Shown here: positions 2,701 through 63,623 of the stretch, piece by piece
Layout: each line of letters starts with the position of its first letter
Numbering within the stretch: position 1 is the first letter of the stretch
IMG/VR virus record: IMGVR_UViG_3300045961_000282
Location: 124,001-188,000 of that record
Length of the DNA stretch: 64,000 bases
Reading direction: 5' to 3' (one strand)
The notes under the pieces: generated by a model
What the model was told of the DNA's origin: nothing
Databases searched by the model: none
What the model saw: only the letters and a program-made list of their open reading frames with translations
Program-made: the position numbers and the translations under genes

Positions 2701-2728
2701 GCGTCCACGGTAGCCCACGGGTCAACCG

Positions 2729-3727
2729 TCAGGAAGCAAGAGACGCCGCAGCCTGCGGCCACCACACTCCTGCGGGCGGCTCGCCCCGGCCGCACTCGCC
2801 ATCAGAGTTTCCGGGCTGCTTGATCCACAGGTAGGCGTCGGCGCCGGGCTCATCGGTGCCAGTGGTGGGGCTCTTCCCCAGCCGCGCCGTCATGCTGTTG
2901 CACCAGTCGCCCGGTTCGACGGGGGCGCCGTTGCGGCTGACGTCGATCACGTAGCGCGTGACGCCAACCCGACGGCCCATCTCGCGTGCATATTCGGCGC
3001 TGCGGGCCGTGGAAACGTGGTTGGACACGTTCACTGCGATGCCGGTGGCCCGACGAACTCCGGAACGCCCCAGCGCCCGCGCGAGTTCTGTGCGATCCAG
3101 TTTCCATGTCGCGTTTCCTGCGTCGAGGTAGACACGGGTTTCCCCCTCGGTCAACAACGTCACCGCCTCGGACAGCAGGGCGTACCGATTCTTCGTCCCA
3201 CCTTGGACCTGACATCCGTCGACGGCCTGCGCGACCGCATCTGGCTCAATGATCACGATGGCCCGACGACCCCCGATGCCAGCCGCGATCTGCTGAACCC
3301 AGCGCAGGTACTGCGCGTCCGTCCGAGCCCCGCCCTTGGAGTACAGGCCGCAGTCGCGATCAGGGATCCCGTAGACGACGATCATCGGGACCTGCCGGGC
3401 GACGGCAGCCTCATCGACCAAGCGATCCACGGCTGCGGTGGGATCTCGGAAGGGATCGGTGAACCATACGGCCGTCGGTTGGGCGGCTATCCGGGCAGTT
3501 GCTTGCACCAGTTCCGACGGCGCATCGTCGGGCAGGTTGTTCAGTGCCCAGACCGCCGAGCCCTGCGGACTTCGGTACAGCGTTGCCCCAGCCAGCGGAT
3601 TGCTGACCGACTCGGGAGCGTTGGCCACCTCCGCCGATGGGCGGCACGCCGTCATCGCGAGGGTGGCAACAACAACGAAGGGCACCCAGAAGGGTGCCCT
3701 TCGTTGGTTTCGATCAACTCTCGACAC
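2729..3727 (-). CDS. cslZ: GH6 endoglucanase lipoprotein, CslZ-like
   Basis: AQPTAVWF, VYGIPDRDC, IEPDA, YLDAGN, VIDVSRNG, DAYLWIKQPGNSDGEC; lipobox-like LAMTAC; GTG start overlapping the glxA stop. Confidence 0.85.
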   Translation of the reverse strand: MSRVDRNQRRAPFWVPFVVVATLAMTACRPSAEVANAPESVSNPLAGATLYRSPQGSAVWALNNLPDDAPSELVQATARIAAQPTAVWFTDPFRDPTAAVDRLVDEAAVARQVPMIVVYGIPDRDCGLYSKGGARTDAQYLRWVQQIAAGIGGRRAIVIIEPDAVAQAVDGCQVQGGTKNRYALLSEAVTLLTEGETRVYLDAGNATWKLDRTELARALGRSGVRRATGIAVNVSNHVSTARSAEYAREMGRRVGVTRYVIDVSRNGAPVEPGDWCNSMTARLGKSPTTGTDEPGADAYLWIKQPGNSDGECGRGEPPAGVWWPQAAASLAS

Positions 3728-5624: not shown

Positions 5625-7342
5625 GGAGCGGCCCTTTCAAGGCTTTGGGTGCTGATGATGTCGTCGTTGGACTTGCTGAGGTTCATGACCACCGGAGCAA
5701 GGCAGACGACGATCGCCAGCATCGCCCACATGCGCATCATGAAGTGGTCGTGGCCCAACGGAACGGATGCCACAAACGCGGAGGTCAGCAGTGCCCCCCA
5801 TGCCAGATGACGCGTCCGCCAGAACGTGGACATCCTCTCACGGCCCTGCGGTGCCGGTCCCTTCGGAGTGACATTGAACGCGCCGGGCTTGCGGCTGACT
5901 GCGTGCCACAGAGCCGTGACGTACAGCGGGGCCGACAGAATGGACACGGCCATCCCCGACATGCCGGACGAACCATGCTCCTCGTGCGGGGACACGTTGT
6001 GGCGGCGGTTCCAGAAGTAGATGCCCAACTGCAGTGCAGCGGCGTTGAGGTACAGCATCAGCCACAGACCCGCGGTGACCACGACGCTGCCGATGCCGGT
6101 GAGCAGGTACATCACGAGGTTGAAGGTGCCGATGATCCACGTCAGGGCGGCAGTCGGGTAGTAGGACATCAACATCATGTAGTGCACCCGGCGCCGCCAC
6201 GGCAGGGTAGGCATCAGGGTGCGGAACTGCCGGACCACCACGTCGTCGGTGCCGCGCGACCAGCGCACCTGCTGAGTGAAGTAATCGCCCCAAAGCGATG
6301 GACCTTCGCCGACTGCAAGCACGTCGGGGGTGTAGACCGACTTCCACTTGTTCCCTGTCGCCGGGTTGACCGACGCGTGCCAGACGATGCTGGTCGCGGC
6401 GTCCTCGGTGATGGAGTCCTGCAGCCCGCCGATCTCCATGAGTGCCGAGATCCGCACGGCGTTGTTGGTTCCGACGAACATTGCGCAGTCCCACGTGTTG
6501 GCCGCGCGCTGCAGCACGGAGTGGAACAGGTACTGCTGGCTCTCCGCGGCGCGGGTCACGAAGTTGTCGTAGTTGCCGTAGACCTGCGGGCCGACCACGA
6601 ACGCGACGTCGGGGTCACGGAAGTAGCCCAGCAACCGCTCGGCGAAGTTGGGCAGCGGCACGTGGTCAGTGTCGACCGAGATCCAGTAGTCGTAGTTGTA
6701 CCCGTGGGTGAACAGCCACGAGTTGTAGTTGCCGTGCTTGGTCTTGGCCTTGTACCGACCCTCAGCGGTGTTCCACTCCTCGATGCCCTTGCGCGAGAAG
6801 TGCCGCACGCCGATCTCGGCGCACATCGCCTTGACCTCGTCGTCGTCGCCCTCGTCGAGCACCCAGACGTCCAGAACACCGGAGTGCCTGATCTGCAGGG
6901 CGGCCTCGAGGGTCCGCCGCAGCATGTGCAGCGGTTCCTTGCCGGGCACGATTGTGGTGATAAAAGCCACTCGGCTGTCGGTTTCCGGCAGGACCGGAAT
7001 CGGGTCACGGGCGTGCACGGTGGCCATCGCCAACGTGCCGACGTTGATCAAGCGGAACGTCTCGATGGCTCCGATGAACACGATCATCGTGACGCTGACG
7101 GCGAGTTGCCAGCCACTCTGCCCCTGCGGGTAGTGACTGGGCCACATGAGCCAGATCAGGAACACCGACTGGAACAGCAGCGCTGCGCTGACCAGAAGGA
7201 TGGACCACAGGCGAGCCCTGCCGTGATTGAGTCGACGGTACTCAACAGTGTGCTCAGGACCTGCCTCAACGGGCTCACCGGCCAACTCGCTGTACCGGTC
7301 GTAGTCGTAGTGATACGTCTGCACGGTCCCCTCTTCCTGCAT
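5621..7342 (-). CDS. cslA: cellulose synthase-like processive GT2, CslA-like
   Basis: LDEG, KHGNYN, VDTDH, FVVGPQVYGN, ITED, QQVRW; multiple TM helices; N-terminal YDYDRYSELAG resembles Streptomyces CslA; start approximate. Confidence 0.9.
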   Translation of the reverse strand: MQEEGTVQTYHYDYDRYSELAGEPVEAGPEHTVEYRRLNHGRARLWSILLVSAALLFQSVFLIWLMWPSHYPQGQSGWQLAVSVTMIVFIGAIETFRLINVGTLAMATVHARDPIPVLPETDSRVAFITTIVPGKEPLHMLRRTLEAALQIRHSGVLDVWVLDEGDDDEVKAMCAEIGVRHFSRKGIEEWNTAEGRYKAKTKHGNYNSWLFTHGYNYDYWISVDTDHVPLPNFAERLLGYFRDPDVAFVVGPQVYGNYDNFVTRAAESQQYLFHSVLQRAANTWDCAMFVGTNNAVRISALMEIGGLQDSITEDAATSIVWHASVNPATGNKWKSVYTPDVLAVGEGPSLWGDYFTQQVRWSRGTDDVVVRQFRTLMPTLPWRRRVHYMMLMSYYPTAALTWIIGTFNLVMYLLTGIGSVVVTAGLWLMLYLNAAALQLGIYFWNRRHNVSPHEEHGSSGMSGMAVSILSAPLYVTALWHAVSRKPGAFNVTPKGPAPQGRERMSTFWRTRHLAWGALLTSAFVASVPLGHDHFMMRMWAMLAIVVCLAPVVMNLSKSNDDIISTQSLERAAP

Positions 7343-7445
7343 GACGTGAGTATGGACGGTTGCGCCAGCAGGCCTTCCCTGTCTGACGAGTTGCCAAACC
7401 CTACCACGATTTGGATCCCTGCTAGTCCGTGCTAGGGTTTGCCCC

Positions 7446-7658
7446 GTGAGTGACATGGACCGCGACGCAGCGGTGGCCGGGGCCCTGTTCCTTGGATTCG
7501 TCGGAACCATCAGCCTGACAGTGGGGATCGCCATACTGTTCGGAGCCGGGTGGGCGTTCGTCGCCTTCGGGGGGATCACCTTGGTCAATGCATGGCTCAT
7601 GGGGGTGCGGAAGAGCCGCAGCAACGAAACCCTGCTTTTCGCCAACACCAACAACTAG
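7446..7658 (+). CDS. small two-TM membrane protein (leaderless)
   Basis: TAGGGT -10 element 7 nt before the GTG; hydrophobic. Confidence 0.6.
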   Translation: MSDMDRDAAVAGALFLGFVGTISLTVGIAILFGAGWAFVAFGGITLVNAWLMGVRKSRSNETLLFANTNN

Positions 7659-9402: not shown

Positions 9403-9536
9403 GTGATCGCCTGCACGTTTATGGTCACACTGAGGATTGCGCGTGTCTTGCGTGCTCCTTCCTGAATGCCATAGCCGCCGCGCCCGGGGAGCGGACGTCG
9501 GACAAGATCAAATACGTTTTAGGAGACAGTGAATGA
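9399..9536 (+). CDS. 45-aa Cys/His mini-ORF
   Basis: GTGA and ATGA overlaps bridge it to the dehydrogenase; HTEDCACLAC. Confidence 0.4.
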   Translation: MSDRLHVYGHTEDCACLACSFLNAIAAAPGERTSDKIKYVLGDSE

Positions 9537-10777
9537 GCAAGGTGCTGATAGTTGGGATGGGCTACGTCGGCCTGCCTATCGCCGTACGTGCCGCCGAGGT
9601 TGGCCACGAGGTCATCGGCGTGGACGTGAGTCAGGACAAGATCGACTCGATCGCCACTGGGATGTCCTACATCGAGGACGTCAGCGACGAGCGGCTGCAG
9701 GCCGTGGTTGCATCAGGGGCCCTGCGGGCCACCGACCTCAGTGAGCGACACTCCTTCGAGATCGCGCTGATCACCGTGCCGACGCCGGTCGACGCGATGA
9801 AGCGGCCCGACCTGCAGTTCATCGAGGCGGGGGCGAACTACGTCGCCTCCTGCATGAACGGCGGCGAGGTTGTAGTGCTGGAGTCCACCACGTACCCCGG
9901 CACCACCGAGGATGTCGTCGCCGAGCGCATTCGCCGGATCGCTGGGCTGGAGCCGGAGCGCGACTACATGCTCGGGTACTCGCCTGAGCGCATCAATCCC
10001 GGCGACTCGGTGAACACCTTCGACACGGTTCCCAAGATCGTGTCCGGCACCGATGCGGCCTCGCTGGCGAGGATCCAGTCGTTCTACGACACGCTGGTCC
10101 AGCGGACCGTCCCCGTGTCCTCGCCGCGCGCGGCCGAACTGGCCAAGGTGTTCGAGAACACGTTCGCTCAGGTCAACATCGCGCTGGTCAACGAACTGGC
10201 ATTGGTCTGCTCCGAGTTGGGCCTCGACGTCGATGAGGTTCTCGACGCCGCCGCCACCAAGGGGCACTCGATCATGCGGTTCCGTCCCGGCCCCGGTGTC
10301 GGTGGGCACTGCATCAGCGTCGACCCGCTGTACCTGACGTGGATGCGGCGCAACATGGCGGGCAAGGCGTTCCGGTTCGCCGAACTGGCCGATGAGATCA
10401 ACGGCGGCATGCCCGAGCACGTGGTTCACCGGGCCCGCTCGGTGCTCAACGACCACGGGGTTCCGATCTGGAACTCGCGCATCGGCGTGCTGGGGGTTGC
10501 CTACAAGCCCAACGTCGCCGACATCCGGGAGTCTCCGGCTCTGGTTCTGGTTGAGCGACTGCGCGAGACCGGCGCGGAAGTCTCCGTGTTCGATCCGCAC
10601 GTCAACACCGCTGAGGATGCTGAACTGGCGGCAAAGTCCGCGGGGTCGTTCGACCTGATGATCGTGGCCACCGATCACGACGACTTCGACTACGAGGCCA
10701 TCCACAAGGGTGCCCGTGTCATCCTCGACACACGCAACCGCTACCCTCGGGGCACGGCGCGGGTCCACAAGTTGTGA
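9533..10777 (+). CDS. nucleotide-sugar (UDP-HexNAc/UDP-Glc) 6-dehydrogenase, WecC/WbpA/TviB-type
   Basis: GMGYVG Rossmann motif, ESTTYPGTT, KVFENTF..VNIALVNE, GGHCI catalytic Cys. Confidence 0.92.
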   Translation: MSKVLIVGMGYVGLPIAVRAAEVGHEVIGVDVSQDKIDSIATGMSYIEDVSDERLQAVVASGALRATDLSERHSFEIALITVPTPVDAMKRPDLQFIEAGANYVASCMNGGEVVVLESTTYPGTTEDVVAERIRRIAGLEPERDYMLGYSPERINPGDSVNTFDTVPKIVSGTDAASLARIQSFYDTLVQRTVPVSSPRAAELAKVFENTFAQVNIALVNELALVCSELGLDVDEVLDAAATKGHSIMRFRPGPGVGGHCISVDPLYLTWMRRNMAGKAFRFAELADEINGGMPEHVVHRARSVLNDHGVPIWNSRIGVLGVAYKPNVADIRESPALVLVERLRETGAEVSVFDPHVNTAEDAELAAKSAGSFDLMIVATDHDDFDYEAIHKGARVILDTRNRYPRGTARVHKL

Positions 10778-10820
10778 CCGCTTCCAAGGGGGGGTGTCTG
10801 CTGTGACCCAAGAATTCCTC

Positions 10821-10931
10821 ATGTCCTACGGACAGATCACCATCATCGGCCTCGGGTCGTTGATAGGGCTGAGCGCGGTCCTGATCCATCGCGTGCGCAC
10901 TCGCCATCACAAGTACGGGAAGGGATCATGA
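10821..10931 (+). CDS. 36-aa single-TM peptide
   Basis: Hydrophobic segment followed by a basic tail; ATGA overlap with the GT2. Confidence 0.45.
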   Translation: MSYGQITIIGLGSLIGLSAVLIHRVRTRHHKYGKGS

Positions 10932-12265
10932 CTCCGATAGGTCGCAACACCCCGGCTCGCGGTCTGGGCATGGTGGCCAGCCTGATCTTCATCGGGCTGT
11001 TCATCGGCTACTTCTCATGGTCGGCCATGGGCTGGATCAACCAGAGCGGCGCATGGTTGCTGGTCGGTTTCTTTGCCTTCTTCGCCACCATCACGCTGGG
11101 GAACATGATCTCCGGGCTGTTCTGGAAGTCGTTCACCGACCTCCCGGTCCCCGACGCCCGCGTGGTGGCCATCGTGCCGATCTATGCGGAAAAGACCGAG
11201 CGGGTCCACAAGGTGGTGCTCTCGCTGATCCATCAGACTCGCCCGCCGGACCACATCTACGTGGTCGACGACGGCTCCGAGCCACCGCTGGTGGGCTTCG
11301 AGCACCCGCTGGTGACGTGGATCCGACAGGAGAACGCAGGCAAGCGCCACGCGCAGGCACGCGCACTGGCCGAGTTCGACCGCGATGAGTACGACCTGAT
11401 CCTCACTGTCGACTCGGATTCGGTGTTCGACGCCGATGCGGTTGAGCACCTGATGCGCCCGTTCAACCACTCGGACATCCATGCCTCGACGGCGATGATC
11501 TACACGTCGAACTGGCGGGCCAACCTGATGACCCGGTTCACCGACATCAACCTGCAGATCTCGTGCTTGCAGATGCGGATGCTCCGCTCGTGGATGGGTA
11601 TTGTTACGCCGACCTCGGGGGCCATCGCCATCTACCGGCCGTGGGTGTTCTTCGACAACCTCGACGACTACCTGACCTCAGGCAACATCGGCGACGACCG
11701 ACGGCTGTCGTTCTACGCGCTCATGAAGGGCCGTGTCGTCACGGTCAACGAGGCGGCCTGCGAGACGCACCTGCCCGAGACGCCGCGCGGCATTTTCAAG
11801 CAGCGCACCCGTTGGGCCAAGTCGGCATGGCTGGGAACTCCCTTCGTGTGGACCAACCTCAAGCCGCTGGTGGTGTTCTTCTACACCTACCCGCTGCTGT
11901 TCGCCCTGCTGTGGCCGCTGTCGGTGGCGTTCCTGTCGTGGATCTGGATCGCCTACGGCATCCCGTCGCTGATGTACGGCGTCGCCTTCTGGTTCGTCAC
12001 GTCGTTCACGATGACCGGGGCTGCCTATGCCCAGCGGCCCTCGATGCCGTTCGGGCAGAAGGTGCTGCAGGTCGGGCTGTCCCTGCTCTACCCGATCTGG
12101 GGTCTGATCCTGCTGCGTCCCGCGGCGTACAAGGCGCTGGCCACCGTCCGCGATCAGAGTTGGGGGACCCGTGGAGCCGATGCTCCTGAGCCTGAGATGG
12201 ACGGCGTGGCCCCGGCCCCATCTGGTGGGCGCGTGATCGGCCTGCCCAAGAGGACTGCCGCCTGA
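10928..12265 (+). CDS. processive GT2 of the hyaluronan synthase/NodC type
   Basis: DDGS, GKRHA, VDSDS, GDDRRL and QRTRW motifs; N- and C-terminal TM helices. Confidence 0.85.
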   Translation: MTPIGRNTPARGLGMVASLIFIGLFIGYFSWSAMGWINQSGAWLLVGFFAFFATITLGNMISGLFWKSFTDLPVPDARVVAIVPIYAEKTERVHKVVLSLIHQTRPPDHIYVVDDGSEPPLVGFEHPLVTWIRQENAGKRHAQARALAEFDRDEYDLILTVDSDSVFDADAVEHLMRPFNHSDIHASTAMIYTSNWRANLMTRFTDINLQISCLQMRMLRSWMGIVTPTSGAIAIYRPWVFFDNLDDYLTSGNIGDDRRLSFYALMKGRVVTVNEAACETHLPETPRGIFKQRTRWAKSAWLGTPFVWTNLKPLVVFFYTYPLLFALLWPLSVAFLSWIWIAYGIPSLMYGVAFWFVTSFTMTGAAYAQRPSMPFGQKVLQVGLSLLYPIWGLILLRPAAYKALATVRDQSWGTRGADAPEPEMDGVAPAPSGGRVIGLPKRTAA

Positions 12266-21506: not shown

Positions 21507-21729
21507 GGGGGCTATCTCCTTTGCGTGGGGGGTCAGGGGACTCTCCCCTGCTCACCTAGATAACTATACATGATTGGACTAGCAAAGGCTACCTTGGCAG
21601 GGGGCTGGGAGCCTGCGCCCCCACAGGAGTGGTGCTCACCTGAGGCAGGTTTGACACGTAACAATATCTAGTGCTAAGGTTGTACCAACAGCCCGGGGAA
21701 AGGCCCCGGGGACCTGAAAGGAAACACTC

Positions 21730-25587: not shown

Positions 25588-27432
25588 TTACCGCCTGCCC
25601 TTGTACGGAGAACGTTTTCCGAGGTTCGCTGCCCCTAGTGGCGGCAACCGATAGGCAGACATTGAGCGGGCACGCAGATTAGAATTGACGGCAAATGAAG
25701 CGCCCTTGACCTTGGTGGTGAGGGCCAGCGACGCCCAGACCATCGCGTCGAGACGTCCCGGAGATACCTTGGATTCCGCGGGGACCCATGAGGTGATCTC
25801 GGATTCCAACAGCGGGTGGTAGTTCAGCATATGCAGGCGGCCCTGCTCAGCAAGGGCCGCCACCGGCTCGGCGCGGGTTGCCTTGCCTGCTCGGGCGTGC
25901 ACGATGTAGACCGGCACGTTGGCATTCACCTGTCCGATGGCCATGCGGACCAGTTCGCCGCCCTGATTCCCCTCGGCCACCACTGGGCCGCCCCACTTGA
26001 TCGCCATGTCCACGACCCGCTTGGCCCAGACCGCCGGGCTGCCCAGCACGGTCGCATCCTCCACGACGTAGAGTTGGCGGCGGTAGAAGTCCCGCTCGGC
26101 GGTTCCCTTCACCACCACGATGCCCGCCTCGTCCTTGGGGCGCTCAGCAACACTGGGATCGACCCCGATCACCGTGTGCATCTTGATCCCGCCCGGCAGT
26201 TCGGTCACCCGTGCCGCATCGAGGTCGGACTGCATGAACAGCGCGCCCTCGATGTCGTGCAGCATCTCGCCCATCAGTTCCTGCTGGCCGATCCGGGTCC
26301 CTTCGTACAGGCCGAGGATCGTGGCGCGGAAGGACTGCGCAAGGTTGGCGAGGTTGTCATATGTCGTTCCACGGGTGATGACGATGCCGAACTCAGGATT
26401 CTCGGATTCCTCCAGCAGTTGGAACATCGAGGGAACGCGTCGCGGCGTGGTCGTGGCAACCATACGCGGCATGTCGCCATCAACCGGAAGTCGTAGACCC
26501 AGCCGCAAGTTGGCGAACGCCGTCAGACCATCGGCGCCGGAGACCTGCGGGTAGGAAGCAAACTCGTCGCAGTTGTGAATCAAGACTCCGGCGGCATAGA
26601 ACTCCGGCGCTCCGTTGATCGTGAGGTCATAGACATTGGCTCGACCCGCCGGGCGCACGGAAGCAACAGGAAACAGGGTGGTGCTCGAGTCTGTGCTGAG
26701 GCGGACGTGAACCATATCCCCGGCCTCGAGGTCGGCGGCCTGAACCCACGTGTCCCGCCTCGATTCGCTCGCCACCAACACGAGGTGATCGGGGGTGCAG
26801 CGCAATGTCGTCGGCCCGGCCTCGATCTCCACCACCTCGCGGTCGGTTCCCGTGCGCTGTGCGCGCGCGACCGGCCAGAAGCCGGAACGGGTGAGCACTT
26901 TCATCCCCGGCTGGATCTGTTCGATGGGCAGCGGCCCCAGCGAGGTGAGTACCGGCTCCCCTTCGGCTACGCACCACGCGGTGTCGAACTGGGGACCACG
27001 CAACTGGTCCGGCTCGTCGGCGGAGAAGGCCAATGCATACGCGCCGTTCGGCCACGACACCCGGCGCTTGGATGGCTCCCAGACGGGTACCTCGCCGGGT
27101 CGGGAGGACTCGATGATCCCCGACGGGCCGTTGACCATGACATCGCGGACGTCAGCAGCGGTGCGGCCCAGCAGCGCGATTCGCCTGCCGTGGCCATCGC
27201 GGACCCGTTCATTGATCCACTCAGCGGCGGTTCTCGTTTTCCCCCAACCCCGCCCTGCCATCGCCAGCCAAAGCACCCAGTCTCCGGACGGAGGGGTCTG
27301 GGAGGGCCTCCTCCAGAAGGCCCAATCGTGTATCAGCGACTCGGCATCAACCCCTTCAAGGGTCGCCTCGCGCTCCTCAGGGGGAAGCAGGGCGATGCGT
27401 TGGGCCATCGAGAGTTCGTGGCCGTAGGTCAT
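25588..27432 (-). CDS. terL: terminase large subunit (intein-containing)
   Basis: Walker A AGRGWGKT; LRGPQF..W-[intein]-CDEFA Walker B; TTTP; nuclease GVDPS, DEAGIVV and DAMVWA; leaderless TATGGT promoter. Confidence 0.92.
   Translation of the reverse strand: MTYGHELSMAQRIALLPPEEREATLEGVDAESLIHDWAFWRRPSQTPPSGDWVLWLAMAGRGWGKTRTAAEWINERVRDGHGRRIALLGRTAADVRDVMVNGPSGIIESSRPGEVPVWEPSKRRVSWPNGAYALAFSADEPDQLRGPQFDTAWCVAEGEPVLTSLGPLPIEQIQPGMKVLTRSGFWPVARAQRTGTDREVVEIEAGPTTLRCTPDHLVLVASESRRDTWVQAADLEAGDMVHVRLSTDSSTTLFPVASVRPAGRANVYDLTINGAPEFYAAGVLIHNCDEFASYPQVSGADGLTAFANLRLGLRLPVDGDMPRMVATTTPRRVPSMFQLLEESENPEFGIVITRGTTYDNLANLAQSFRATILGLYEGTRIGQQELMGEMLHDIEGALFMQSDLDAARVTELPGGIKMHTVIGVDPSVAERPKDEAGIVVVKGTAERDFYRRQLYVVEDATVLGSPAVWAKRVVDMAIKWGGPVVAEGNQGGELVRMAIGQVNANVPVYIVHARAGKATRAEPVAALAEQGRLHMLNYHPLLESEITSWVPAESKVSPGRLDAMVWASLALTTKVKGASFAVNSNLRARSMSAYRLPPLGAANLGKRSPYKGRR
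26572..26973 (-). mobile_element. 134-aa mini-intein (no homing endonuclease)
   Basis: Starts CVAEG; block B CTPDH; ends VYDLT...IHN followed by Cys+1. Confidence 0.92.
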
Positions 27433-27504
27433 GGGGCGAACCATATCCCGCCGTCTCGGGTGTCAACCGCGGTTCATGCTCGATTCACGCGCGATGAATC
27501 CCGC

Positions 27505-28641: not shown

Positions 28642-28743
28642 GAGGAAGGAGGCTACCTGCTCGTGTTGATTCTGTCAGCCCCCTTGTGCTATGCTTATTC
28701 CTGTGAGCGAGGGAAAGTCCCTCCCCAACGAAAGGAAACCCCC

Positions 28744-35156: not shown

Positions 35157-35217
35157 CGTATAGTTGTTCCTGTGAGCGAGGGAAGGACCCTCGCCCGAAT
35201 GAAAGGGAACAACCACC

Positions 35218-36868: not shown

Positions 36869-37528
36869 TGGGGTGCTCCTTCGTTGGTAGTGGTTGTTGT
36901 TTCACGCAATAGTAGCACCCCGCGCGAGGTCAGGACGAGGAGGCCCTCGCCGCCAACCGTGCCGCGCGCTCAGCCAACTGCGCCTCTCGAGCCGCCCGGC
37001 GCGTCTCGCGCTCCTTCTGCTCGCGCAGTGCGGCGGACATCGATGGGGACTTGGGATCCCACGAACGGACATTGGGAGAGGTGCTGACGGCCATGTTCGA
37101 CTCCGATGCGTGGAAGGTGGGGCGTCCCTGCGTCAGGTCAAGGATACGGATGTCGGGGACGCTGCACCCGGCGATTCCCTACCCTGCCGTGCATGAAGCC
37201 ACAGGATCTGGCCGCCGATGTCCTGTACCTGTCCCTTGCCGTCCCGGTCGCGCTCGCGATGCACGTGGCCATCGGCGCAGTGGAGGGGATCGAGTGGCTC
37301 AAGAGCCTGCGTCCCTGACTGCCGCCGGGGTCGGCGCGCTGGCCGGAGTGATCGCCGCCGCCCTCGCTGGGTACGTCGTGGCCGAGCGGGTGACGACGTG
37401 GATGAGTTCTGTCATGTCCCCGTCGCAGACTGGTTCCAGCACGGATTAGGTGATCCGCACTAGTTCGTGTAGTCTTATTCCTGTGAGCGAGGGAAGTGCC
37501 CCGCTCCTGATCCCTGAGGAGGGACCCC

Positions 37529-42222: not shown

Positions 42223-42301
42223 CTTGCTCTCTGCCACTGGCAGCGGTATAGTTGTCGGTGTGAGCGAGGGAGAGTCCCCCGCCGAACCGGAAGGAAACCT
42301 C

Positions 42302-48213: not shown

Positions 48214-48299
48214 CGGGATGGCACGGGGGGCCGATTGCCACGGCGTCGGCCCCCCGTGCTATGATTCACCCATCACCACCACCACGAAGGAGAATGACC

Positions 48300-49920: not shown

Positions 49921-50009
49921 TCCCCACCACAGCGGGCCGATCTGACAAGGGTCGGCCCGCTGTGGTATGCTTGATCCACAACAACCACCACTACCGAAAG
50001 GAATCACTC

Positions 50010-51605: not shown

Positions 51606-51703
51606 GAGCACGACGCAGCGGATTTGCAAGATTTCGCTGCGTCGTGCTAGTGTTATTCCATAACCACCTAGCAACACCACCACCACCTGAAAGGATCACC
51701 ACC

Positions 51704-54226
51704 ATGACCACTGCTGCTGACCGCGCCAAGGCGCTCGCCGCGAAGTACGCCGCCACCACGAGTGAGCGCCAGCATGACCAGAACTTCATCCGCGACTTCG
51801 TGGGCGTGTTCACCGACCGCGACCCCGCGGACATCTTCCGGTTCCAGTACCCCGTCGAGACCCCGCGCGGCACGACTGGCGCGATCGACGCCCTGTGGGA
51901 GAGCCACATCCTGTTCGAGATGAAGTCGGCGGGCAAGGACCTGCACGCAACCCTCAAGGATCAGGTGCGCCCCTACGTCGCCCATCTGGCCCCGGCGAAG
52001 CACCCGCAGATGTACATCATCAGCGACTTCCAGAACTTCCTCGTCGTGGACCCCGACGGCACCAAGCACGAGTTCCCACTGGCGGACCTGCACGCCCACG
52101 TGTCCCTGTTCACCCCGATCTTCGACGGCCTCCCGGCCTACCTGCGCAGCCACGGCACCGTGAACGAGCAGGCGGCATCGCTGCTGAGCGCGGTCCTCAA
52201 GGGCCTGCGGAAGAACGGCTACTCCGAGACGGACCTGCCCGCGCTGGCCACCCGGTTGCTGTTCGCCCTGTACGCCGACGACAACTACGTCTGGAAGAAC
52301 GGCACGTTCCACGGCGACGTGCTGGGCACCCCGGCTGACGGGGCCACCCTTGGCCGTGTGATCGACGGCATCTTCCGACTGCTCGACAGCCCGAACGCCG
52401 ACGCAACAGACTACTGCTACATCAACGGCAGCATGTTCGCCGGGGACATCGCGGTGCCCGTGTTCGACGCGGATACCCGTGAGGCGCTGCTGGAGGCCTG
52501 CGAGTACGACTGGCGCGGCTTGGACCCGATGATCTTCGGGACGATCTACCAGTCAGCGATGGACGCCGACGAGCGCCACGCGGAGGGCGCGCACTACACC
52601 CACGAGCAGGACATCCTCGACGTGCTGGGTCCGGCGTTCCTCGACAACCTGAAGGCGCAGTATGCCGCCGCACAGGGGAGCGCGACCAAGTTGCGCAACT
52701 TCCTCAAGCGCCTGTCGGAGATCGAGGTCCTCGACCCGTCGTGTGGATCGGGCAACTTCCTCATGGTGGCCTACCGCGAGTTGCGCGCGCTGGAGACCGC
52801 CGCGTCGCTCGACCTCGCGGCGGGCGGCGCCAAGACGATCCCGGCGCAGCGCGTGTCACTGGCGCAGTTCCACGGCATCGAGTACAACGCCCTGTCGGCA
52901 TCGGTGGCCCGCACGAGCCTGTGGCTCACGCTGCACGCCGCCGATCAGCGGCACACCGAGGCAATGGGCGAGTTGATGTGGGACACGTTCCCGCTCAAGG
53001 ACGTGGCCGACATCCGGCACGCGAACGCGGTCACGACCGACTGGAACGCCGAGTTCCCGAACCTGACGGCCATCGTCGGCAACCCGCCGTACATCAGCGC
53101 GAAGAAGGAGCGCGACGGCGGACAGAATGCCCAGCAGGTCGCGGAACGCAAGGCGCTGGGCATCAAGGGCGGGATGATGGACTACGCCCACATCTGGATG
53201 GTCAAGTCTGCGCAGTACATCGCCGAGTTCCCCGATACCCGGTCAGGTCTCGTGGTGACGGATTCCGTCGCACAGGGCACGCAGGCATCGGGCCTGTGGT
53301 CACACCCGGCCATGCAGGACGTGTACCCGATCTTCGGGCGGCAGTCCTACGTCTGGCCCGGCGATGCATCGGTGCGCGTGGTGAACTACGGCCTTGGCTC
53401 CAAGCCTGAGGCAGTCGAGTTGCGCGCCGAGGATCGCAGCATGATCCCGGCTGCCTACCTGACCCCCTACCTCACGCCGACCGACATCCCCTCGCGGGCC
53501 ACGGCCAACGTGTCGCGCACGGCCCCGGCGTGGATGGTGAACCTGAAGAACGGTACTTCGTATGCCGACTTCGGCCACTACGCCAAGTTGGGCGACGACC
53601 TCGCGGTCATCCAGCGCGACCATCCCGAGATGCTGGTGAACAAGGTGTCATCCTCGAACCTGCTGTCAGGCAAGGATGATCCGGTGCTGTGGTTCGGAAA
53701 CCGAACCTCGAAGGCTGTGGCTCACAAGGCCATCGCGCCACGGCGCGAGGCTGTGCGGATCAAGCGTGGCGCCGGGCACCCGAAGGGACCGGAGTGGGTT
53801 CCGTCGTCCGTGGTCACCGGGACGTTCATGGTGGTGCCCGCGACGTTCAGCAAGAGTTACGAGCGCACGCCCGTCGTGATCCTGTCGGGCACGAACTACA
53901 TGACCCAGAAGGTCTACTACGCCCCGGTGGATTGGTTCATGGCCGGGCTGGTCATGTCCAAGCGCGCGATGGACGCCCAGATCGCAGGCGGCAGCAAGAT
54001 GGGCAAGGGCGGCGACGTTCAGTACGGCACCGGCTACCTGTACGGGATGCCTGCCCCGACCAACGACACCCCCGAGTTGCGGGCCAAGATCGCGGCCAAG
54101 GCACAGGAGTGCATCGCCGCCCGGCCCGGCCCGGCAGCCGAGTGCATGAAGGTCACCAACATGCCCGAGTCGCTGGCGAAGTTGCACCGCGAGTTGGACG
54201 CGCTGGTCGATGAGTGGTGGGGCTGA
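51704..54226 (+). CDS. MmeI-like type IIL restriction-modification enzyme (endonuclease-m6A methyltransferase fusion)
   Basis: IDALWESHILFEMKSAGKDL (PD-ExK), YINGSMF, DPMIFG, GAHYT, LDPSCGSGNFL, GIE, IVGNPPY. Confidence 0.88.
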   Translation: MTTAADRAKALAAKYAATTSERQHDQNFIRDFVGVFTDRDPADIFRFQYPVETPRGTTGAIDALWESHILFEMKSAGKDLHATLKDQVRPYVAHLAPAKHPQMYIISDFQNFLVVDPDGTKHEFPLADLHAHVSLFTPIFDGLPAYLRSHGTVNEQAASLLSAVLKGLRKNGYSETDLPALATRLLFALYADDNYVWKNGTFHGDVLGTPADGATLGRVIDGIFRLLDSPNADATDYCYINGSMFAGDIAVPVFDADTREALLEACEYDWRGLDPMIFGTIYQSAMDADERHAEGAHYTHEQDILDVLGPAFLDNLKAQYAAAQGSATKLRNFLKRLSEIEVLDPSCGSGNFLMVAYRELRALETAASLDLAAGGAKTIPAQRVSLAQFHGIEYNALSASVARTSLWLTLHAADQRHTEAMGELMWDTFPLKDVADIRHANAVTTDWNAEFPNLTAIVGNPPYISAKKERDGGQNAQQVAERKALGIKGGMMDYAHIWMVKSAQYIAEFPDTRSGLVVTDSVAQGTQASGLWSHPAMQDVYPIFGRQSYVWPGDASVRVVNYGLGSKPEAVELRAEDRSMIPAAYLTPYLTPTDIPSRATANVSRTAPAWMVNLKNGTSYADFGHYAKLGDDLAVIQRDHPEMLVNKVSSSNLLSGKDDPVLWFGNRTSKAVAHKAIAPRREAVRIKRGAGHPKGPEWVPSSVVTGTFMVVPATFSKSYERTPVVILSGTNYMTQKVYYAPVDWFMAGLVMSKRAMDAQIAGGSKMGKGGDVQYGTGYLYGMPAPTNDTPELRAKIAAKAQECIAARPGPAAECMKVTNMPESLAKLHRELDALVDEWWG

Positions 54227-54893: not shown

Positions 54894-54977
54894 TCCCACC
54901 ACGGAGGGCCGATTCGACAAGGGTCGGCTCCCCGTGGTAAGGTTCTACCAACACCACAACGACGAAAGGACACCGAC

Positions 54978-56118: not shown

Positions 56119-56190
56119 ATCCGAGAGCGCAGGTTGAGCCGGACGGTCTCCAAAACCGTCTTCGTGAGAGTTCGAATCTCTCCTCGGGTG
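56119..56190 (+). tRNA. trnW: tRNA-Trp(CCA), short atypical D-arm, no encoded CCA
   Basis: Acceptor ATCCGAG/CTCGGGT, G73, anticodon arm ACGGT-CTCCAAA-ACCGT, T-arm GAGAG-TTCGAAT-CTCTC; TTGACA/TATGCT promoter. Confidence 0.8.
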
Positions 56191-56325
56191 CTGGCGCGAG
56201 TCAGGCGCGGAATCGGCAGCGAATGAGTCTGCAACGGCGCTGAAAGCCGAGAAAAGGGTCCCCTCGACCGCAGACCGGGGGGACCTGCCTGACACCACCA
56301 TCACCATCACGACGAAAGGAGCGAC

Positions 56326-61277: not shown

Positions 61278-61386
61278 CAGCGCAGGGGGCGGATTCGACA
61301 CGGGTCCGCTCCCTGTGCTAGGCTTCTACCAACACAACCACCACCTCTGCTAGAAAAACTGGCAGACCCAAGAAAGGAGCAAGATC

Positions 61387-62118
61387 ATCGGACTCGACAT
61401 CTACCTGCACAGCCGCGGCTACGCCGCCGCCTCCCGCAAGGAGGCTGCGCTCTGGGAGGACTGGAAGGAGGGTGACCCCCATCCGGAGGTCGCCTACCCC
61501 GAGGAGCCCGCCTCCCGCGCCAGCGCGCTGCACCCGGGCAACATCTGCACGCCGACCTACCTGCGCTCGTCCTACAACGAGGGCGGGTTCAATCGGGCGG
61601 TGCCGCGGTTCCTCAAGGACAACGGCACGTCGCTGTACGGCATCTTCGAGCCGCTGATCGGCGGCGAGGATGGCGAGTACCTGTTCGAGGTCACCGACCC
61701 CGGCAAGGTGCTCATGGTCCGCGACCGTGCCCGCGACGTGGCCAAGCGACTGCGTGCGCTGGAAGCGCCGCTGACCACGATGAAGTTCCGCAACTGGCAC
61801 AACCCGTCCATGTCGGAGTTCGATGCCATCGAGTGGACCGAGAAGAACCTCGACAAGGCGAAGAAGGGGACCACCGAGTTCGACAAGATGGCCTTCACGG
61901 CCAAGGAGGGCTTCTTCGACCCCACCGGGGTCAGGGTCCACGGTGTGACGTTCGACCCGAGCGGCGAGGTCATCCTCGTGATCCGCGCGGAGACGGACGG
62001 AAAGCCGTGGTCCACGTCCTACGCCGACTCCGCAGAGATCCTCGCTGAGGAGTTCTGCCAGACCATGCTCGACCTCATCGAGTCCGAGGGCGGCGCAACG
62101 CTCGTCTGGAGCGCCTAG
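61387..62118 (+). CDS. conserved-type phage protein (GLDIYL N-terminus) with an ATC start codon
   Basis: Frame open 213 nt upstream of the annotated GTG; AAGGAG RBS 7 nt before ATC-GGA-CTC-GAC-ATC-TAC-CTG. Confidence 0.6.
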   Translation: MGLDIYLHSRGYAAASRKEAALWEDWKEGDPHPEVAYPEEPASRASALHPGNICTPTYLRSSYNEGGFNRAVPRFLKDNGTSLYGIFEPLIGGEDGEYLFEVTDPGKVLMVRDRARDVAKRLRALEAPLTTMKFRNWHNPSMSEFDAIEWTEKNLDKAKKGTTEFDKMAFTAKEGFFDPTGVRVHGVTFDPSGEVILVIRAETDGKPWSTSYADSAEILAEEFCQTMLDLIESEGGATLVWSA

Positions 62119-62121
62119 GTC

Positions 62122-62317
62122 GTCGTGGTCCGCACGGGGCGCGCCTGACCCGGCGTCCGAGTACGGGAACTTCCATGCCTCGTCATGCCGCGCATGACGT
62201 GACGAGGTATCCCGTGCTCAACCTATCCGCCGGGCGAACGACGCCCTCGACGCCTCCCGTTGGACATGCGGGGCACGGCGGGGAAAGGGTGCATCCGGCC
62301 CCCGTGCGGACCACGAC
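62122..62317 (+). ncRNA. candidate structured RNA (18-bp terminal stem, two long internal arms, U-tract)
   Basis: gtcgtggtccgcacgggg / ccccgtgcggaccacgac perfect pairing; nested stems; followed by TTTT. Confidence 0.55.
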
Positions 62318-62385
62318 TTTTCTTGCACAGGATTCCTGTGCTAGGATTTGAATACAACCACCACAACGACACGAAAGGAATCACA

Positions 62386-62592
62386 ATGACCACCATGAAT
62401 GTGACCCGCGAGCCCCTGCTCACGAAGGCGGACCGCTGCGAGGCCTGTGCTGCCGCTGCGATGGTGCGCGTGCGCACCGAGAACCTCGGCGTCTGGCTGT
62501 TCTGCGGCTCGCACTGGGACCGCAGCAAGGACGCCCTGCCCGGCGTGGTGCACGTCCACGACGAGCGCAACCCCTTGGGGGTGCGGTCATGA
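62386..62592 (+). CDS. small actinobacterial zinc-binding protein (DUF7455-like)
   Basis: LTKADRCEACAAAAMVRV..LFCGSH. Confidence 0.7.
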   Translation: MTTMNVTREPLLTKADRCEACAAAAMVRVRTENLGVWLFCGSHWDRSKDALPGVVHVHDERNPLGVRS

Positions 62593-62942
62593 TCCCGTTC
62601 TCGGTCGCCCGCGGGGCGGCCCAGTTCGTCATCGACCTCGTTGTCGTGGCCAACGAACTGCGCAAGCAGGACAACGAGCCTGAGCACGTCCACAAGTCCC
62701 TGACCCGCCACGAGGCCGGGCGCATCGGGCTGGAGATGGTCATGGTCATGCGGCAGTCCCGCGAGAACCCGGGCACCTTCCAGCCCATGATGCAGGCCAT
62801 CATGGACGACCTCGACTGCACCGAGCAGATCGTGGACGTGGCCATGTCGCTGGCGGGCATGGTCGCGGTTCTGGCCAAGGATGAGGACATGACCCGGTTC
62901 GGCGAGTTCATCCTTCGCCACGAAGTGCAGGAGATGCCATGA
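62589..62942 (+). CDS. hypothetical protein
   Basis: ATGA overlaps. Confidence 0.65.
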   Translation: MIPFSVARGAAQFVIDLVVVANELRKQDNEPEHVHKSLTRHEAGRIGLEMVMVMRQSRENPGTFQPMMQAIMDDLDCTEQIVDVAMSLAGMVAVLAKDEDMTRFGEFILRHEVQEMP

Positions 62943-63409
62943 GCGAGCGGCCCACGGCGGTGCAGATGCTGGAGCCCGCGCGCATCACGCGCGAGCGGGT
63001 GGAGCACTTCGTGCCCCAGATCCTGTACGTCCCGCGCAACGGCAGGCCACAGTTCGTCGCCGCCGATGGTGAGGGCTCTGCGCCCGAGGCTGTCGGCGCG
63101 GTGCTGGCCCAAGTGCGTGCGGCGCACGGCCCCGCCGAGTGGATCGCGGTGACTGTCGATGCCTACGCCAAGAACTTCGCTGAGGACCCCGGCTTCATCG
63201 CGCGCGGCGAACTCAGCGAGGCGTTCGCCGAAGGTGACCCCGCGGTGGTCGAGCAGATGATCGTCATTCTGGTCGACCGCTATAAGGGGGTCGAGGTCGC
63301 CTCGCAGAACTACCGCTACCTGCCCTCCGAGGGCTGGGAGTGGAGTGAGCCGGACACGCGGGGCGAGTTCGATGGCGACCTCATGAAGACCATCAAGTTC
63401 TACATGTAG
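62939..63409 (+). CDS. hypothetical protein
   Basis: ATGA overlap; GC3 bias. Confidence 0.65.
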   Translation: MSERPTAVQMLEPARITRERVEHFVPQILYVPRNGRPQFVAADGEGSAPEAVGAVLAQVRAAHGPAEWIAVTVDAYAKNFAEDPGFIARGELSEAFAEGDPAVVEQMIVILVDRYKGVEVASQNYRYLPSEGWEWSEPDTRGEFDGDLMKTIKFYM

Positions 63410-63551
63410 ATATCCCGAAACGTCCGCGCCTCGCGCGGAGCGCGCTTGTGGTGGGCGCGCGAAGGCCCCGAGCCGGGTTGAGTTTTCCTTTCCTCCCCGG
63501 CCTCGGGGCCTTCCCATGTCTCACGCGCCTACGCGCGCGCGACCGGTGTAG

Positions 63552-63623
63552 AGGCGGAAAAGAGAGTCGAACTCTTGTATGCAGATTTGCAGTCTGCCGC
63601 CTGTGCCGCTCGGCCATTCCGCC
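63552..63623 (-). tRNA. trnC: tRNA-Cys(GCA), no encoded CCA
   Basis: GGCGGAA/TTCCGCC acceptor, U73, GCAGA-CTGCAAA-TCTGC, AAGAG-TTCGACT-CTCTT. Confidence 0.93.

What the first reader, a model, noticed from the sequence alone, without database searches (positions are those of the whole stretch)
62122..62317. A 196-nt highly structured element that matches no RNA family I recognise
Seen: it begins 3 nt after a stop codon. A perfect 18-bp terminal stem encloses a ~90-nt rod (CCCGGCG/CGCCGGG, GAGTACGGGA/TCCCGTGCTC, CCTCGTCA/TGACGAGG) and a second ~50-nt arm, followed by TTTT and the next promoter. This is far larger than the local terminators. Inference: a 3'-UTR-derived ncRNA (6S-like polymerase decoy, protein sponge or Y-like RNA) or a MITE-like element; no target-site duplication is visible.
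Basis: partly seen in the sequence, partly recalled or inferred. Interest (0 to 1): 0.68.

Follow-up and report, generated by a model that had tools for sequence, protein, structure and literature searches.

The report
New structured RNA in actinophage spacer
The 196-nt element is real and belongs to a previously undescribed family of structured phage RNAs, kept in the same gene slot in eight related uncultured phages, with base pairs preserved by compensating mutations; what it does is still unknown.

Summary
Window 62122-62317 (+) folds into a perfect 18-bp closing stem around two arms, with z = -6.6 against dinucleotide shuffles.

It is neither a chance hairpin nor a mobile element. It is single-copy in its 206-kb virus genome, which is 65.7% GC and probably infects a Streptomyces-like host.

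Homologous elements lie directly upstream of the promoter of a DUF7455 gene in 7 further metagenomic phage contigs. Across the 8 sequences:
- 14 of 18 pairs in the closing stem and 6 of 7 in the second helix show changes on both sides.
- 91.7% of cells are paired, against about 47% when partners are slid.
- The junction block is about 95% identical, while third codon positions of the flanking genes are 65-69% identical.
- The long "rod" is only about 35% identical and is absent in one homologue.

No Rfam family matches, and no copy turned up in 185,000 bacterial genomes or in IMG/VR.

Best reading: a stable three-way-junction RNA made on the + strand. Its closing stem also serves as the terminator that abuts the next promoter. 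It most likely acts in trans through its conserved core and a pyrimidine loop, which in two relatives equals the 16S rRNA 3' end. Expression and function are untested. The 6S-like, Y-RNA-like and MITE readings are not supported.

The parts
61387..62118 (+). Upstream gene (244-aa family, no Pfam match). The element forms its 3' untranslated tail. The codon homologous to the start is ATC.
   Evidence: The frame is open over 61354-62118. Homologues are 47-73% identical and start MGLDIY. No Pfam, PHROG or NCBIfam family matches.
62116..62121 (+). Stop codon TAG overlapping a -10-like hexamer (TAGGTC here; TAGGCT or TAGACT in relatives) 1-3 nt before the closing stem.
   Evidence: Sequence read and the homologous upstream flanks. 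Three relatives have the extended form TGCTAGGCT, which matches the phage's own promoter consensus.
62122..62139 (+). P1 5' strand (18 nt).
   Evidence: Perfectly complementary to 62300-62317. 14 of 18 pairs show changes on both sides across homologues.
62140..62148 (+). Conserved junction block: CGC bulge, GCC (P1b 5' strand), UGA (J1).
   Evidence: Nearly invariant in all 8 sequences; mean pairwise identity 0.947. The GCC/GGC pairs are invariant.
62149..62155 (+). P2 5' strand.
   Evidence: Pairs with 62228-62234. 6 of 7 pairs show changes on both sides, e.g. C-G to U-A and G-C to C-G.
62156..62219 (+). Variable rod inside P2: a nested hairpin at 62159-62219.
   Evidence: Always a stable hairpin, but mean identity is only 0.345. 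Length varies, and the rod is absent in L018.
62220..62227 (+). Single-stranded pyrimidine-rich 3' side of the P2 internal loop. It corresponds to the CCUCCUUUCU loop of relatives and is degenerate in the window.
   Evidence: Alignment. The 10-mer in L013 and L019 equals the 16S rRNA 3' end of Streptomyces virginiae. It is unpaired in the MFE folds of L008, L019 and L020.
62228..62234 (+). P2 3' strand.
   Evidence: See P2 5' strand.
62235..62243 (+). J2 (CGAACG, consensus YGAACR) plus the lower part of P3.
   Evidence: GAAC is invariant in all 8 sequences.
62244..62289 (+). P3 arm:
- P3a: CCCU (62244-62247) pairs with AGGG (62286-62289).
- Conserved asymmetric internal loop: CGA (62248-62250) opposite GG+GAA (62281-62285).
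- C-stem: 62251-62254 pairs with 62277-62280.
- Variable apical hairpin: 62255-62276.
   Evidence: P3a is nearly invariant. The first C-stem pair is C-G, U-A or G-C in different homologues once the register is anchored on the loop. Apical hairpin identity is 0.45.
62290..62299 (+). J3 (7 nt) and the P1b 3' strand GGC.
   Evidence: GGCC is invariant; P1b pairs are invariant.
62300..62317 (+). P1 3' strand. Together with the following T run it is the probable terminator hairpin.
   Evidence: In all homologues it ends 0-7 nt before the -35 of the next promoter.
62318..62347 (+). Promoter of the downstream operon: T-rich -35 region at 62318-62323 and extended -10 GTGCTAGGAT at 62338-62347.
   Evidence: It belongs to the genome's GTGCTAnnnT promoter family. 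Relatives have TTGACA, 17-18 nt, then TACAAT, TAGAAT or TATGAT at the same place, with non-conserved spacers.
62386..62592 (+). DUF7455 gene (68 aa, Cys-rich). It is the invariable downstream neighbour of the element.
   Evidence: Pfam PF24254, E = 6e-12. It is the downstream neighbour in every locus that reaches that far, including L018 where the upstream gene differs. L013 is cut before it.

Best explanation
The element is the gene for a previously undescribed structured RNA of 135-197 nt, read on the + strand.

Architecture. A 13-18-bp closing helix (P1, extended by an invariant GCC/GGC after a 3-nt bulge) leads into a three-way junction with near-invariant single strands (UGA and YGAAC). 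One arm (P2) carries a dispensable, hypervariable rod and a single-stranded pyrimidine loop. The other arm (P3) carries a conserved asymmetric internal loop: CGA opposite NN-G(A/U)AA.

How it is made (inferred). In the window it is transcribed as the tail of the upstream mRNA. Its own -10-like hexamer is defective here (TAGGTC), whereas several relatives have a good extended -10. P1 plus the following T's ends the transcript directly against the -35 of the DUF7455 operon promoter. This leaves an RNA whose two ends are locked in a long helix and so shielded from exonucleases.

What it does (inferred, least certain). It most likely acts in trans as a stable RNA. The conserved junction and internal loop would be a binding platform for a protein, phage or host. 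The pyrimidine loop is the likely contact for purine-rich, Shine-Dalgarno-like RNA.
For: Shown:
- The fold is far more stable than shuffles.
- The same element sits in the same slot in 8 loci from different samples.
- The covariance model scores 71-159 bits on the + strand at these loci and nowhere else.
- Covariation: 22 of 35 pairs have changes on both sides against 9.8 +/- 1.9 in shuffles (0 of 500), and 91.7% of cells are paired against 33-48% when partners are slid. The P3 C-stem covaries once its register is fixed.
- Junction block identity is 0.95, against 0.65-0.69 at third codon positions of the flanking genes, and 0.35-0.45 in the rod and the apical hairpin.
- Distances between conserved blocks differ by non-multiples of 3, so it is not coding.
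- The wobbles (G-U or U-G) in P2 lie on the + strand.
- The pyrimidine loop is kept in L018, which lacks the rod, and equals the 16S 3' end in L013 and L019.
- The promoter abutting P1 is conserved in position and hexamers only.

Inferred: the transcript ends, its stability, and action in trans.
Against: - There is no expression data. The only sequencing run holding this DNA is the source DNA metagenome.
- Only 8 sequences (7 complete) from one small phage clade are available, so compensatory changes are few independent events.
- The window's own pyrimidine loop is degenerate, as is that of L022, which weakens any Shine-Dalgarno-pairing role here.
- Overall G-U versus A-C counts do not decide the strand (7 versus 6); the strand call rests mainly on context.
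- No partner protein or target was identified. The neighbouring proteins are all of unknown function.
- A purely cis role (terminator or insulator) cannot be excluded.
Confidence: 0.45

Rival explanations
1. A purely cis-acting element: an elaborate terminator, insulator or 3'-end stabiliser between the upstream gene and the DUF7455 promoter. The conserved core could serve as the docking site of a termination or antitermination factor, or act on RNA polymerase itself as HK022 put RNA does.
For: P1 belongs to the same CACGGGG/CCCCGTG hairpin family as the genome's ordinary hairpin-promoter units. P1 always ends next to the -35 of the following promoter. A relative (L016) has only a plain hairpin-promoter in this slot. 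The element is single-copy and position-fixed.
Against: A terminator needs neither a three-way junction with about 95% conserved single strands, nor covarying inner helices, nor a conserved internal loop. Dozens of other gene junctions in the same genome manage with 30-40-nt hairpins. A put-like role would be expected just downstream of a promoter and upstream of the terminators it overrides, yet a strong promoter follows the element.
Confidence: 0.25
2. A new self-cleaving ribozyme or RNA-processing module that cuts the polycistronic transcript between the two genes.
For: It has a compact three-way junction with a handful of invariant unpaired nucleotides (CUGA, GAAC, CGA, GAAA) and freely variable peripheral stems. 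That is the usual signature of small ribozymes, which are common in phage genomes.
Against: No hammerhead, twister, pistol, hatchet or HDV model matches, even at E <= 5-10. The junction strands do not fit the hammerhead core: no G8-A9 equivalents, since P2 starts directly after CUGA. The only HDV-like hit (23 bits, E = 1.7) lies in the coding sequence of L008 and is noise.
Confidence: 0.08
3. A ligand-sensing (riboswitch-like) aptamer that tunes read-through from the upstream gene into the DUF7455 operon.
For: The junction-centred conservation resembles that of an aptamer. The element sits between two co-directional genes, and P1 is followed by T's.
Against: P1 is 13-18 perfect GC-rich pairs and needs no ligand to form. 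No alternative antiterminator pairing is conserved: the candidate overlap I examined is absent in L019 and L020. The downstream operon has its own strong promoter. No riboswitch family matches.
Confidence: 0.07
4. A MITE-like or other mobile DNA element bounded by 18-bp terminal inverted repeats.
For: It has perfect 18-bp inverted termini and a discrete 196-bp unit.
Against: There is one copy in 206 kb and no TSD. No copy was found in IMG/VR, JGI metagenome contigs or 185,579 species genomes, apart from chance hits in coding DNA. It sits in the same syntenic slot in all relatives, and the 'TIRs' change by compensatory substitution.
Confidence: 0.02
5. A 6S-like polymerase decoy or a Y-RNA-like (Ro-binding) RNA.
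For: It has a long terminal stem, is about 200 nt, and shows a 7-nt resemblance (UGGUCCG) to the Ro-binding stem of Y RNAs in the window copy.
Against: There is no 6S, Y_RNA or YrlA hit. The rod is not conserved and is absent in L018. The stem motif is CUCCG, CUUCG or CCUCG in relatives, with no conserved bulge. No tRNA-like module was found, and the phage genome has no TROVE gene.
Confidence: 0.03

Closest known systems
Orphan structured RNA motifs found by comparative genomics in phages and bacteria (Rfam 'Gene; sRNA' and unassigned motifs; e.g. the phage-linked ROOL and GOLLD classes, cited from my own knowledge)
   Same: It is an intergenic, phage-borne fold supported by covariation. Junction nucleotides are invariant, peripheral stems are free to vary, function is unknown, and a tRNA gene lies about 1.2 kb away.
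   Different: It is much smaller (135-197 nt), shows no sequence or structure match to any of the 4227 Rfam models, and is confined so far to 8 contigs of one actinophage clade.
3'-UTR-derived / terminator-embedded bacterial sRNAs
   Same: It lies directly after a stop codon and ends in a GC-rich hairpin followed by T's. It may be released from the upstream mRNA or from an internal promoter, the -10-like TAGRCT.
   Different: Here the terminator stem encloses the whole RNA instead of forming only its 3' end. No chaperone such as Hfq is known in actinobacteria (my own knowledge), and no target has been identified.
The genome's own hairpin-promoter units (intrinsic-terminator-like hairpin overlapping the next promoter)
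   Same: P1 uses the same CACGGGG/CCCCGTG stem family and is fused to the next promoter.
   Different: Ordinary units have a 15-20-nt loop that holds the -35. Here about 160 nt of conserved, covarying RNA structure replaces the loop, and the promoter lies wholly downstream.
16S rRNA 3' terminus (anti-Shine-Dalgarno)
   Same: The P2 loop of L013 and L019 carries the identical 10-mer CCUCCUUUCU. L008, L020 and L018 carry 8-9 nt of it.
   Different: There is no other similarity to the 16S 3' minor domain. The window and L022 copies are degenerate, and the loop does not covary with the purine-rich GRAAGGG of P3.

Membership tests
Any Rfam 15 family | Covariance-model score at or near the gathering threshold. 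| tested here: not met
   The whole window at gathering threshold gives only two tRNAs. Region 61900-62500 at E <= 10 gives only noise of 11-19 bits. Seven homologous loci at E <= 5 give nothing on the element.
Y RNA / YrlA | Conserved Ro-binding helix with a bulge in the terminal stem. | tested here: not met
   P1 is a perfect duplex. The UGGUCCG-like string is not conserved, and there is no Rfam hit.
Y RNA / YrlA | tRNA-like module and linkage to an rsr (Ro60/TROVE) gene. | tested here: not met
   ARAGORN finds no tRNA-like element in the region. No TROVE match exists in the 206-kb genome, with positive controls ringing. The host genome is unknown.
6S RNA | Conserved rod with a central bubble that mimics an open promoter. 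| tested here: not met
   The topology is a three-way junction. The rod is about 35% identical, of variable length, and absent in L018. No RF00013 hit.
MITE / TIR transposon | Multiple copies, a target-site duplication, and TIRs conserved as sequence. | tested here: not met
   Single copy, no TSD, and arms that change by compensatory substitution.
Intrinsic terminator | GC-rich hairpin immediately followed by a U tract. | tested here: inconclusive
   P1 is GC-rich and followed by TTTT in the window, but by only 2-3 T's (the start of TTGACA) in relatives. The consensus scanner does not call it because its loop limit is 8 nt. Termination itself was not measured.
Hammerhead ribozyme | Core CUGANGA, stem II, GAAA, stem III, then a UH cleavage site around a three-way junction. 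| tested here: not met
   CUGA is followed directly by Watson-Crick pairs of P2, so there are no G8-A9 equivalents. J2 is YGAACR and J3 is 6-7 nt. No Rfam hammerhead hit.
Kink-turn | A 3-nt bulge followed by tandem sheared G-A / A-G pairs. | tested here: not met
   The loop is CGA opposite NN-GAA, so the bulge is only 2 nt. The second A is U in L020 and L022.
Retron msr-msd RNA | Flanking inverted repeats plus an adjacent reverse transcriptase. | tested here: not met
   No RVT_1 match in the genome, with positive controls ringing. The neighbouring genes are small proteins of unknown function.
tRNA / tmRNA-like | T-arm and acceptor features recognised by ARAGORN or Rfam. | tested here: not met
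   Searches find only tRNA-Trp and tRNA-Cys elsewhere in the window.

The most novel reading that the evidence does not exclude
The RNA is a phage-made mimic of the 16S rRNA 3' end, displayed on a rigid three-way-junction scaffold. It would either titrate Shine-Dalgarno sequences to re-programme translation during infection, or act as a decoy for a host factor or defence nuclease that targets the anti-Shine-Dalgarno tail. Equally novel alternatives are that its invariant junction is the active site of a new small ribozyme class, or a new aptamer.
Probability: 0.12. Interest if true: 0.85.

Novelty: new variant of a known kind. Interest (0 to 1): 0.6.

Why it matters
Structured RNAs of phages that infect actinobacteria are almost unexplored. 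This one has the hallmarks of a functional RNA: compensatory changes in the stems, an invariant junction and expendable peripheral stems. It lies in a jumbo-size phage that probably infects a Streptomyces-like host. It offers a compact, testable case (135-197 nt, 8 natural variants, one without the rod) for finding a new RNA-protein or RNA-RNA interaction used in infection. It also shows how these phages fuse an RNA gene, a terminator and the next promoter into one unit. If the anti-Shine-Dalgarno-like loop is functional, it would be a new way for a phage to interfere with translation.

Tried and rejected
- DNA similarity to 50,697 GenBank phages, using the element and the 6-kb surroundings in distant mode: no match.
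- Exact P1 arm in IMG/VR: two hits, both single arms inside coding DNA, so chance.
- Core patterns in IMG/VR: nothing, or chance hits in coding DNA.
- Core pattern in JGI metagenome contigs: one chance hit in an ATPase gene.
- Core pattern in 185,579 species genomes: 54 hits, all chance, many within conserved protein genes such as the ATP synthase alpha subunit.
- Model R1 on three actinomycete genomes and, with filters off, around their DUF7455 genes: only bare hairpins of <= 18 bits. The whole-genome search scored only 150 of about 10,000 candidates per genome, so it is weak evidence.
- DUF7455 relatives in IMG/VR: none.
- Pairing between the pyrimidine loop and the GRAAGGG motif of P3: examined by eye and rejected, because the loop does not change when GAAAGG becomes GUAAGG or CUAAGG.
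- An alternative hairpin that shares the P2 3' strand with the P3a 5' strand: not conserved in L019 or L020.
- Targets complementary to the window's loop in its own genome: nothing at ribosome-binding sites.
- Expression: the look-up of sequencing runs returned only the source DNA run (freshwater sediment).
- Literature: searches for DUF7455, actinophage structured RNAs and anti-Shine-Dalgarno mimics gave nothing relevant.
- Atlas look-ups of the neighbouring proteins: hypothetical phage proteins only.
I repeated it from file references.

Full report
**1. Observation**

The window is bases 124001-188000 of a 206,257-bp IMG/VR virus record with 65.7% GC. The TAG stop of the upstream gene is at 62116-62118. 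Three bases later, 62122-62139 is perfectly complementary to 62300-62317.

TTTT follows, then an extended -10, a CA-rich leader, an RBS and an ATG at 62386.

The + strand folds at -118.7 kcal/mol against -88.5 +/- 4.6 for 200 dinucleotide shuffles (z -6.55). The - strand gives z -4.41.

**2. It is neither repeated nor a known family**

The element occurs once in the genome. The only internal echo is a 17-nt match of its 3' arm to an ordinary hairpin-promoter unit outside the window.

Rfam 15 finds two tRNAs in the window and nothing on the element, even at E <= 10. The homologous loci give nothing either. ARAGORN finds no tRNA- or tmRNA-like gene there.

**3. Genomic setting**

This phage separates most genes in the 38-64 kb region with a compact unit. 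The unit is a GC-rich hairpin of the CACGGGG/CCCCGTG type with a -35-like TTCGACA in its loop. An extended -10, GTGCTAnnnT, runs on from the 3' arm. A G-free CA-rich leader and a GAAAGGA ribosome-binding site follow.

The finding sits at one such junction, but about 160 nt replace the usual 15-20-nt loop and the promoter lies wholly downstream.

The host is probably a Streptomyces-like actinomycete. The phage carries GlxA-like, CslA-like GT2 and GH5 cellulase genes.

**4. Homologues**

The upstream 244-aa protein has relatives at 47-73% identity in metagenome assemblies. The downstream 68-aa DUF7455 protein has six relatives at 69-82%. I fetched their contigs, which gave three outcomes.

- **Element present.** A long spacer of 216-283 nt precedes the DUF7455 gene in L006 (identical to L007), L008, L018, L019, L020 (identical to L021) and L022. 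L013 also holds the element but is cut inside it.
- **Different upstream gene.** In L018 the upstream gene is a different one, so the element travels with the DUF7455 operon rather than with the 244-aa gene.
- **Element absent.** More distant relatives of the 244-aa gene lack it. L016 has only a plain hairpin-promoter in that slot. L009-L012 have no spacer at all.

**5. Conservation pattern**

| Region | Mean pairwise identity |
|---|---|
| Junction block [C/A]GCGCCUGA | 0.95 |
| Third codon positions, DUF7455 gene | 0.65 |
| Third codon positions, upstream gene | 0.69 |
| P2 rod | 0.35 |
| Apical hairpin of P3 | 0.45 |

- Also invariant or nearly so: GAAC; CCCU-CGA; G(A/U)AAGGG; GGCC.
- The rod and the apical hairpin of P3 still always form hairpins despite their low identity.
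- L018 has no rod at all.
- Distances between conserved blocks differ by non-multiples of three, so no ORF is conserved.

**6. Covariation**

A covariance model built from seven sequences (R1) scores 87-159 bits on the seven complete + strand elements and 71.5 bits on the truncated L013. It scores 14-38 bits on their - strands, which share the palindromic P1, and at most 20 bits elsewhere.

On the model alignment A3:
- 91.7% of cells are standard pairs, against 33-48% when partners are slid by 1-3 columns.
- 22 of 35 pairs carry changes on both sides, against 9.8 +/- 1.9 in shuffles (0 of 500).
- P1 has such changes in 14 of 18 pairs and P2 in 6 of 7.
- P1b (GCC/GGC) is invariant and P3a (CCCU/AGGG) nearly so, so neither is informative.
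- The P3 C-stem is mis-registered in A3. Anchoring it on the conserved internal loop shows that its first pair is C-G (window, L020), U-A (L019, L022) or G-C (L006, L008).

RNAalifold on the MAFFT alignment independently predicts P1, P1b, P2, P3a and the C-stem.

Caveat: eight sequences from one clade represent few independent events.

**7. Consensus architecture**

- P1 is 13-18 bp, followed by a 3-nt bulge and then P1b.
- J1 is UGA.
- P2 has a large internal loop whose 3' side is pyrimidine-rich, plus an optional rod.
- J2 is YGAACR.
- P3 has an asymmetric internal loop (CGA opposite NN-G(A/U)AA), then a C-stem and a variable hairpin.
- J3 is 6-7 nt and leads into the P1 3' strand.

The internal loop resembles a kink-turn. 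It fails the definition because the bulge is only 2 nt and the second A is U in two sequences. The junction recalls a hammerhead but lacks its core.

**8. Strand and transcript ends**

The genes on both sides and the promoters are on the + strand. P2 has four wobbles (G-U or U-G) on the + strand against one C-A. Over all helices the count is 7 G-U to 6 A-C, so context is the main argument for the strand.

A -10-like hexamer lies 1-3 nt before P1 in all loci (in L018 the candidate hexamer overlaps the start of the aligned stem):
- TGCTAGGCT in L013, L020 and L022, matching the phage promoter consensus.
- TAGACT in L008 and L019.
- TAGGCT in L006.
- TAGGTC, which is defective, in the window.

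A start at such a promoter would fall inside the outer 5 pairs of P1. Those pairs nevertheless covary, so transcripts coming from upstream must matter too.

In the window the RNA is most simply the 3' tail of the upstream mRNA.

What follows P1 in relatives is TT(T)GAC, the -35 of a consensus promoter: TTGACA, 17-18 nt, then TACAAT, TAGAAT or TATGAT, with non-conserved spacers. The terminator's T's and the next -35 therefore overlap.

**9. The pyrimidine loop**

Six of eight sequences carry CYCCUUUC-like loops. L013 and L019 have CCUCCUUUCU, which is identical to the last ten bases of Streptomyces virginiae 16S rRNA.

The loop is kept in L018 although the rod is gone, and it is unpaired in most MFE folds. 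It does not covary with the purine-rich P3 motif.

The window and L022 copies are degenerate. I found no specific target in the phage genome. This is a lead, not a result.

**10. What it is not**

- MITE: single copy, no TSD, syntenic, arms change by compensatory substitution.
- 6S-like: junction topology, rod dispensable.
- Y RNA: no conserved Ro-binding helix, no tRNA-like module, no TROVE gene.
- Retron: no reverse transcriptase.
- Bacterial element: no true hit among 185,579 species genomes, nor next to host DUF7455 genes.

**11. Verdict**

I put the probability that this is a genuine, selectively maintained structured RNA of a new family at about 0.9. Its mechanism is inferred only.

| Reading | Probability |
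|---|---|
| Stable trans-acting RNA using its junction as a protein platform and its pyrimidine loop as an RNA contact, with P1 doubling as terminator | about 0.45 |
| Purely cis terminator, insulator or antitermination role | about 0.25 |
| Ribozyme | about 0.08 |
| Ligand sensor | about 0.07 |

No expression data exist. The only run holding the DNA is the source freshwater-sediment metagenome.

I referred no step, and met no sequence that looked human or toxin-related.

Noticed in passing
window 61372-61390: The upstream gene has a good RBS (GAAAGGAG), but ATC stands where its homologues have the ATG start (they begin MGLDIY). This is either a non-canonical ATC start or a lost start codon.
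   Followed up: partly
window 48219-48285, 49925-49991, 54897-54963, 61278-61344 and others; genome 192907-192960: Composite hairpin-promoter units recur. The stem is of the CACGGGG/CCCCGTG type, with a -35-like TTCGACA in the loop. An extended -10, GTGCTAnnnT, runs on from the 3' arm. A G-free CA-rich leader and a GAAAGGA RBS follow. There are at least 12 in the genome.
   Followed up: partly
window, 27 sites from 10559 to 63718 (e.g. 23234, 32887, 40479, 46680, 47189): The motif GCGCGCGACCGGC is strongly over-represented: 27 matches at <= 2 mismatches against 1.5 expected. The sites appear mostly intergenic and occur in both orientations. Two flank the tRNA-Cys gene. Its function is unknown; a regulator site or a second promoter class are possibilities.
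   Followed up: partly
window 1576-7654 and 9533-12265: The phage carries a glycan-synthesis module: a GH5 cellulase, a GlxA-like galactose-oxidase-type protein, two family-2 glycosyltransferases and a UDP-glucose dehydrogenase. It is reminiscent of the Streptomyces cslA-glxA locus and hints at the host.
   Followed up: no
window 25588-27444 (-): The large terminase subunit appears to be interrupted by an intein. The intein-splicing domain hit lies below Pfam's cut-off.
   Followed up: no
window 51644-54226 (+): An 860-aa MmeI-like restriction-modification / methyltransferase fusion is encoded by the phage.
   Followed up: no
window 63551-63623 (-), 56119-56191 (+); L006 3805-3876 (-), L008 3491-3562 (-): The window carries tRNA-Cys (GCA) and tRNA-Trp (CCA) genes. 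The minus-strand tRNA downstream of the DUF7455 operon is conserved in two relatives.
   Followed up: partly
window 28689-28741, 35158-35210, 37469-37521, 42246-42298 (inverted copy at 21536-21569): A second conserved intergenic motif class is present: GTATAGTT.., then a TGAGCGAGGGA hairpin, then an RBS. It may be a different promoter or leader type used for another gene set.
   Followed up: no
window 62939-63409 (+): The third gene of the DUF7455 operon (156 aa) has an Atlas model whose nearest named structural neighbour is a phage lambda Ea47-domain family (TM 0.69 by query). This is a lead only.
   Followed up: no
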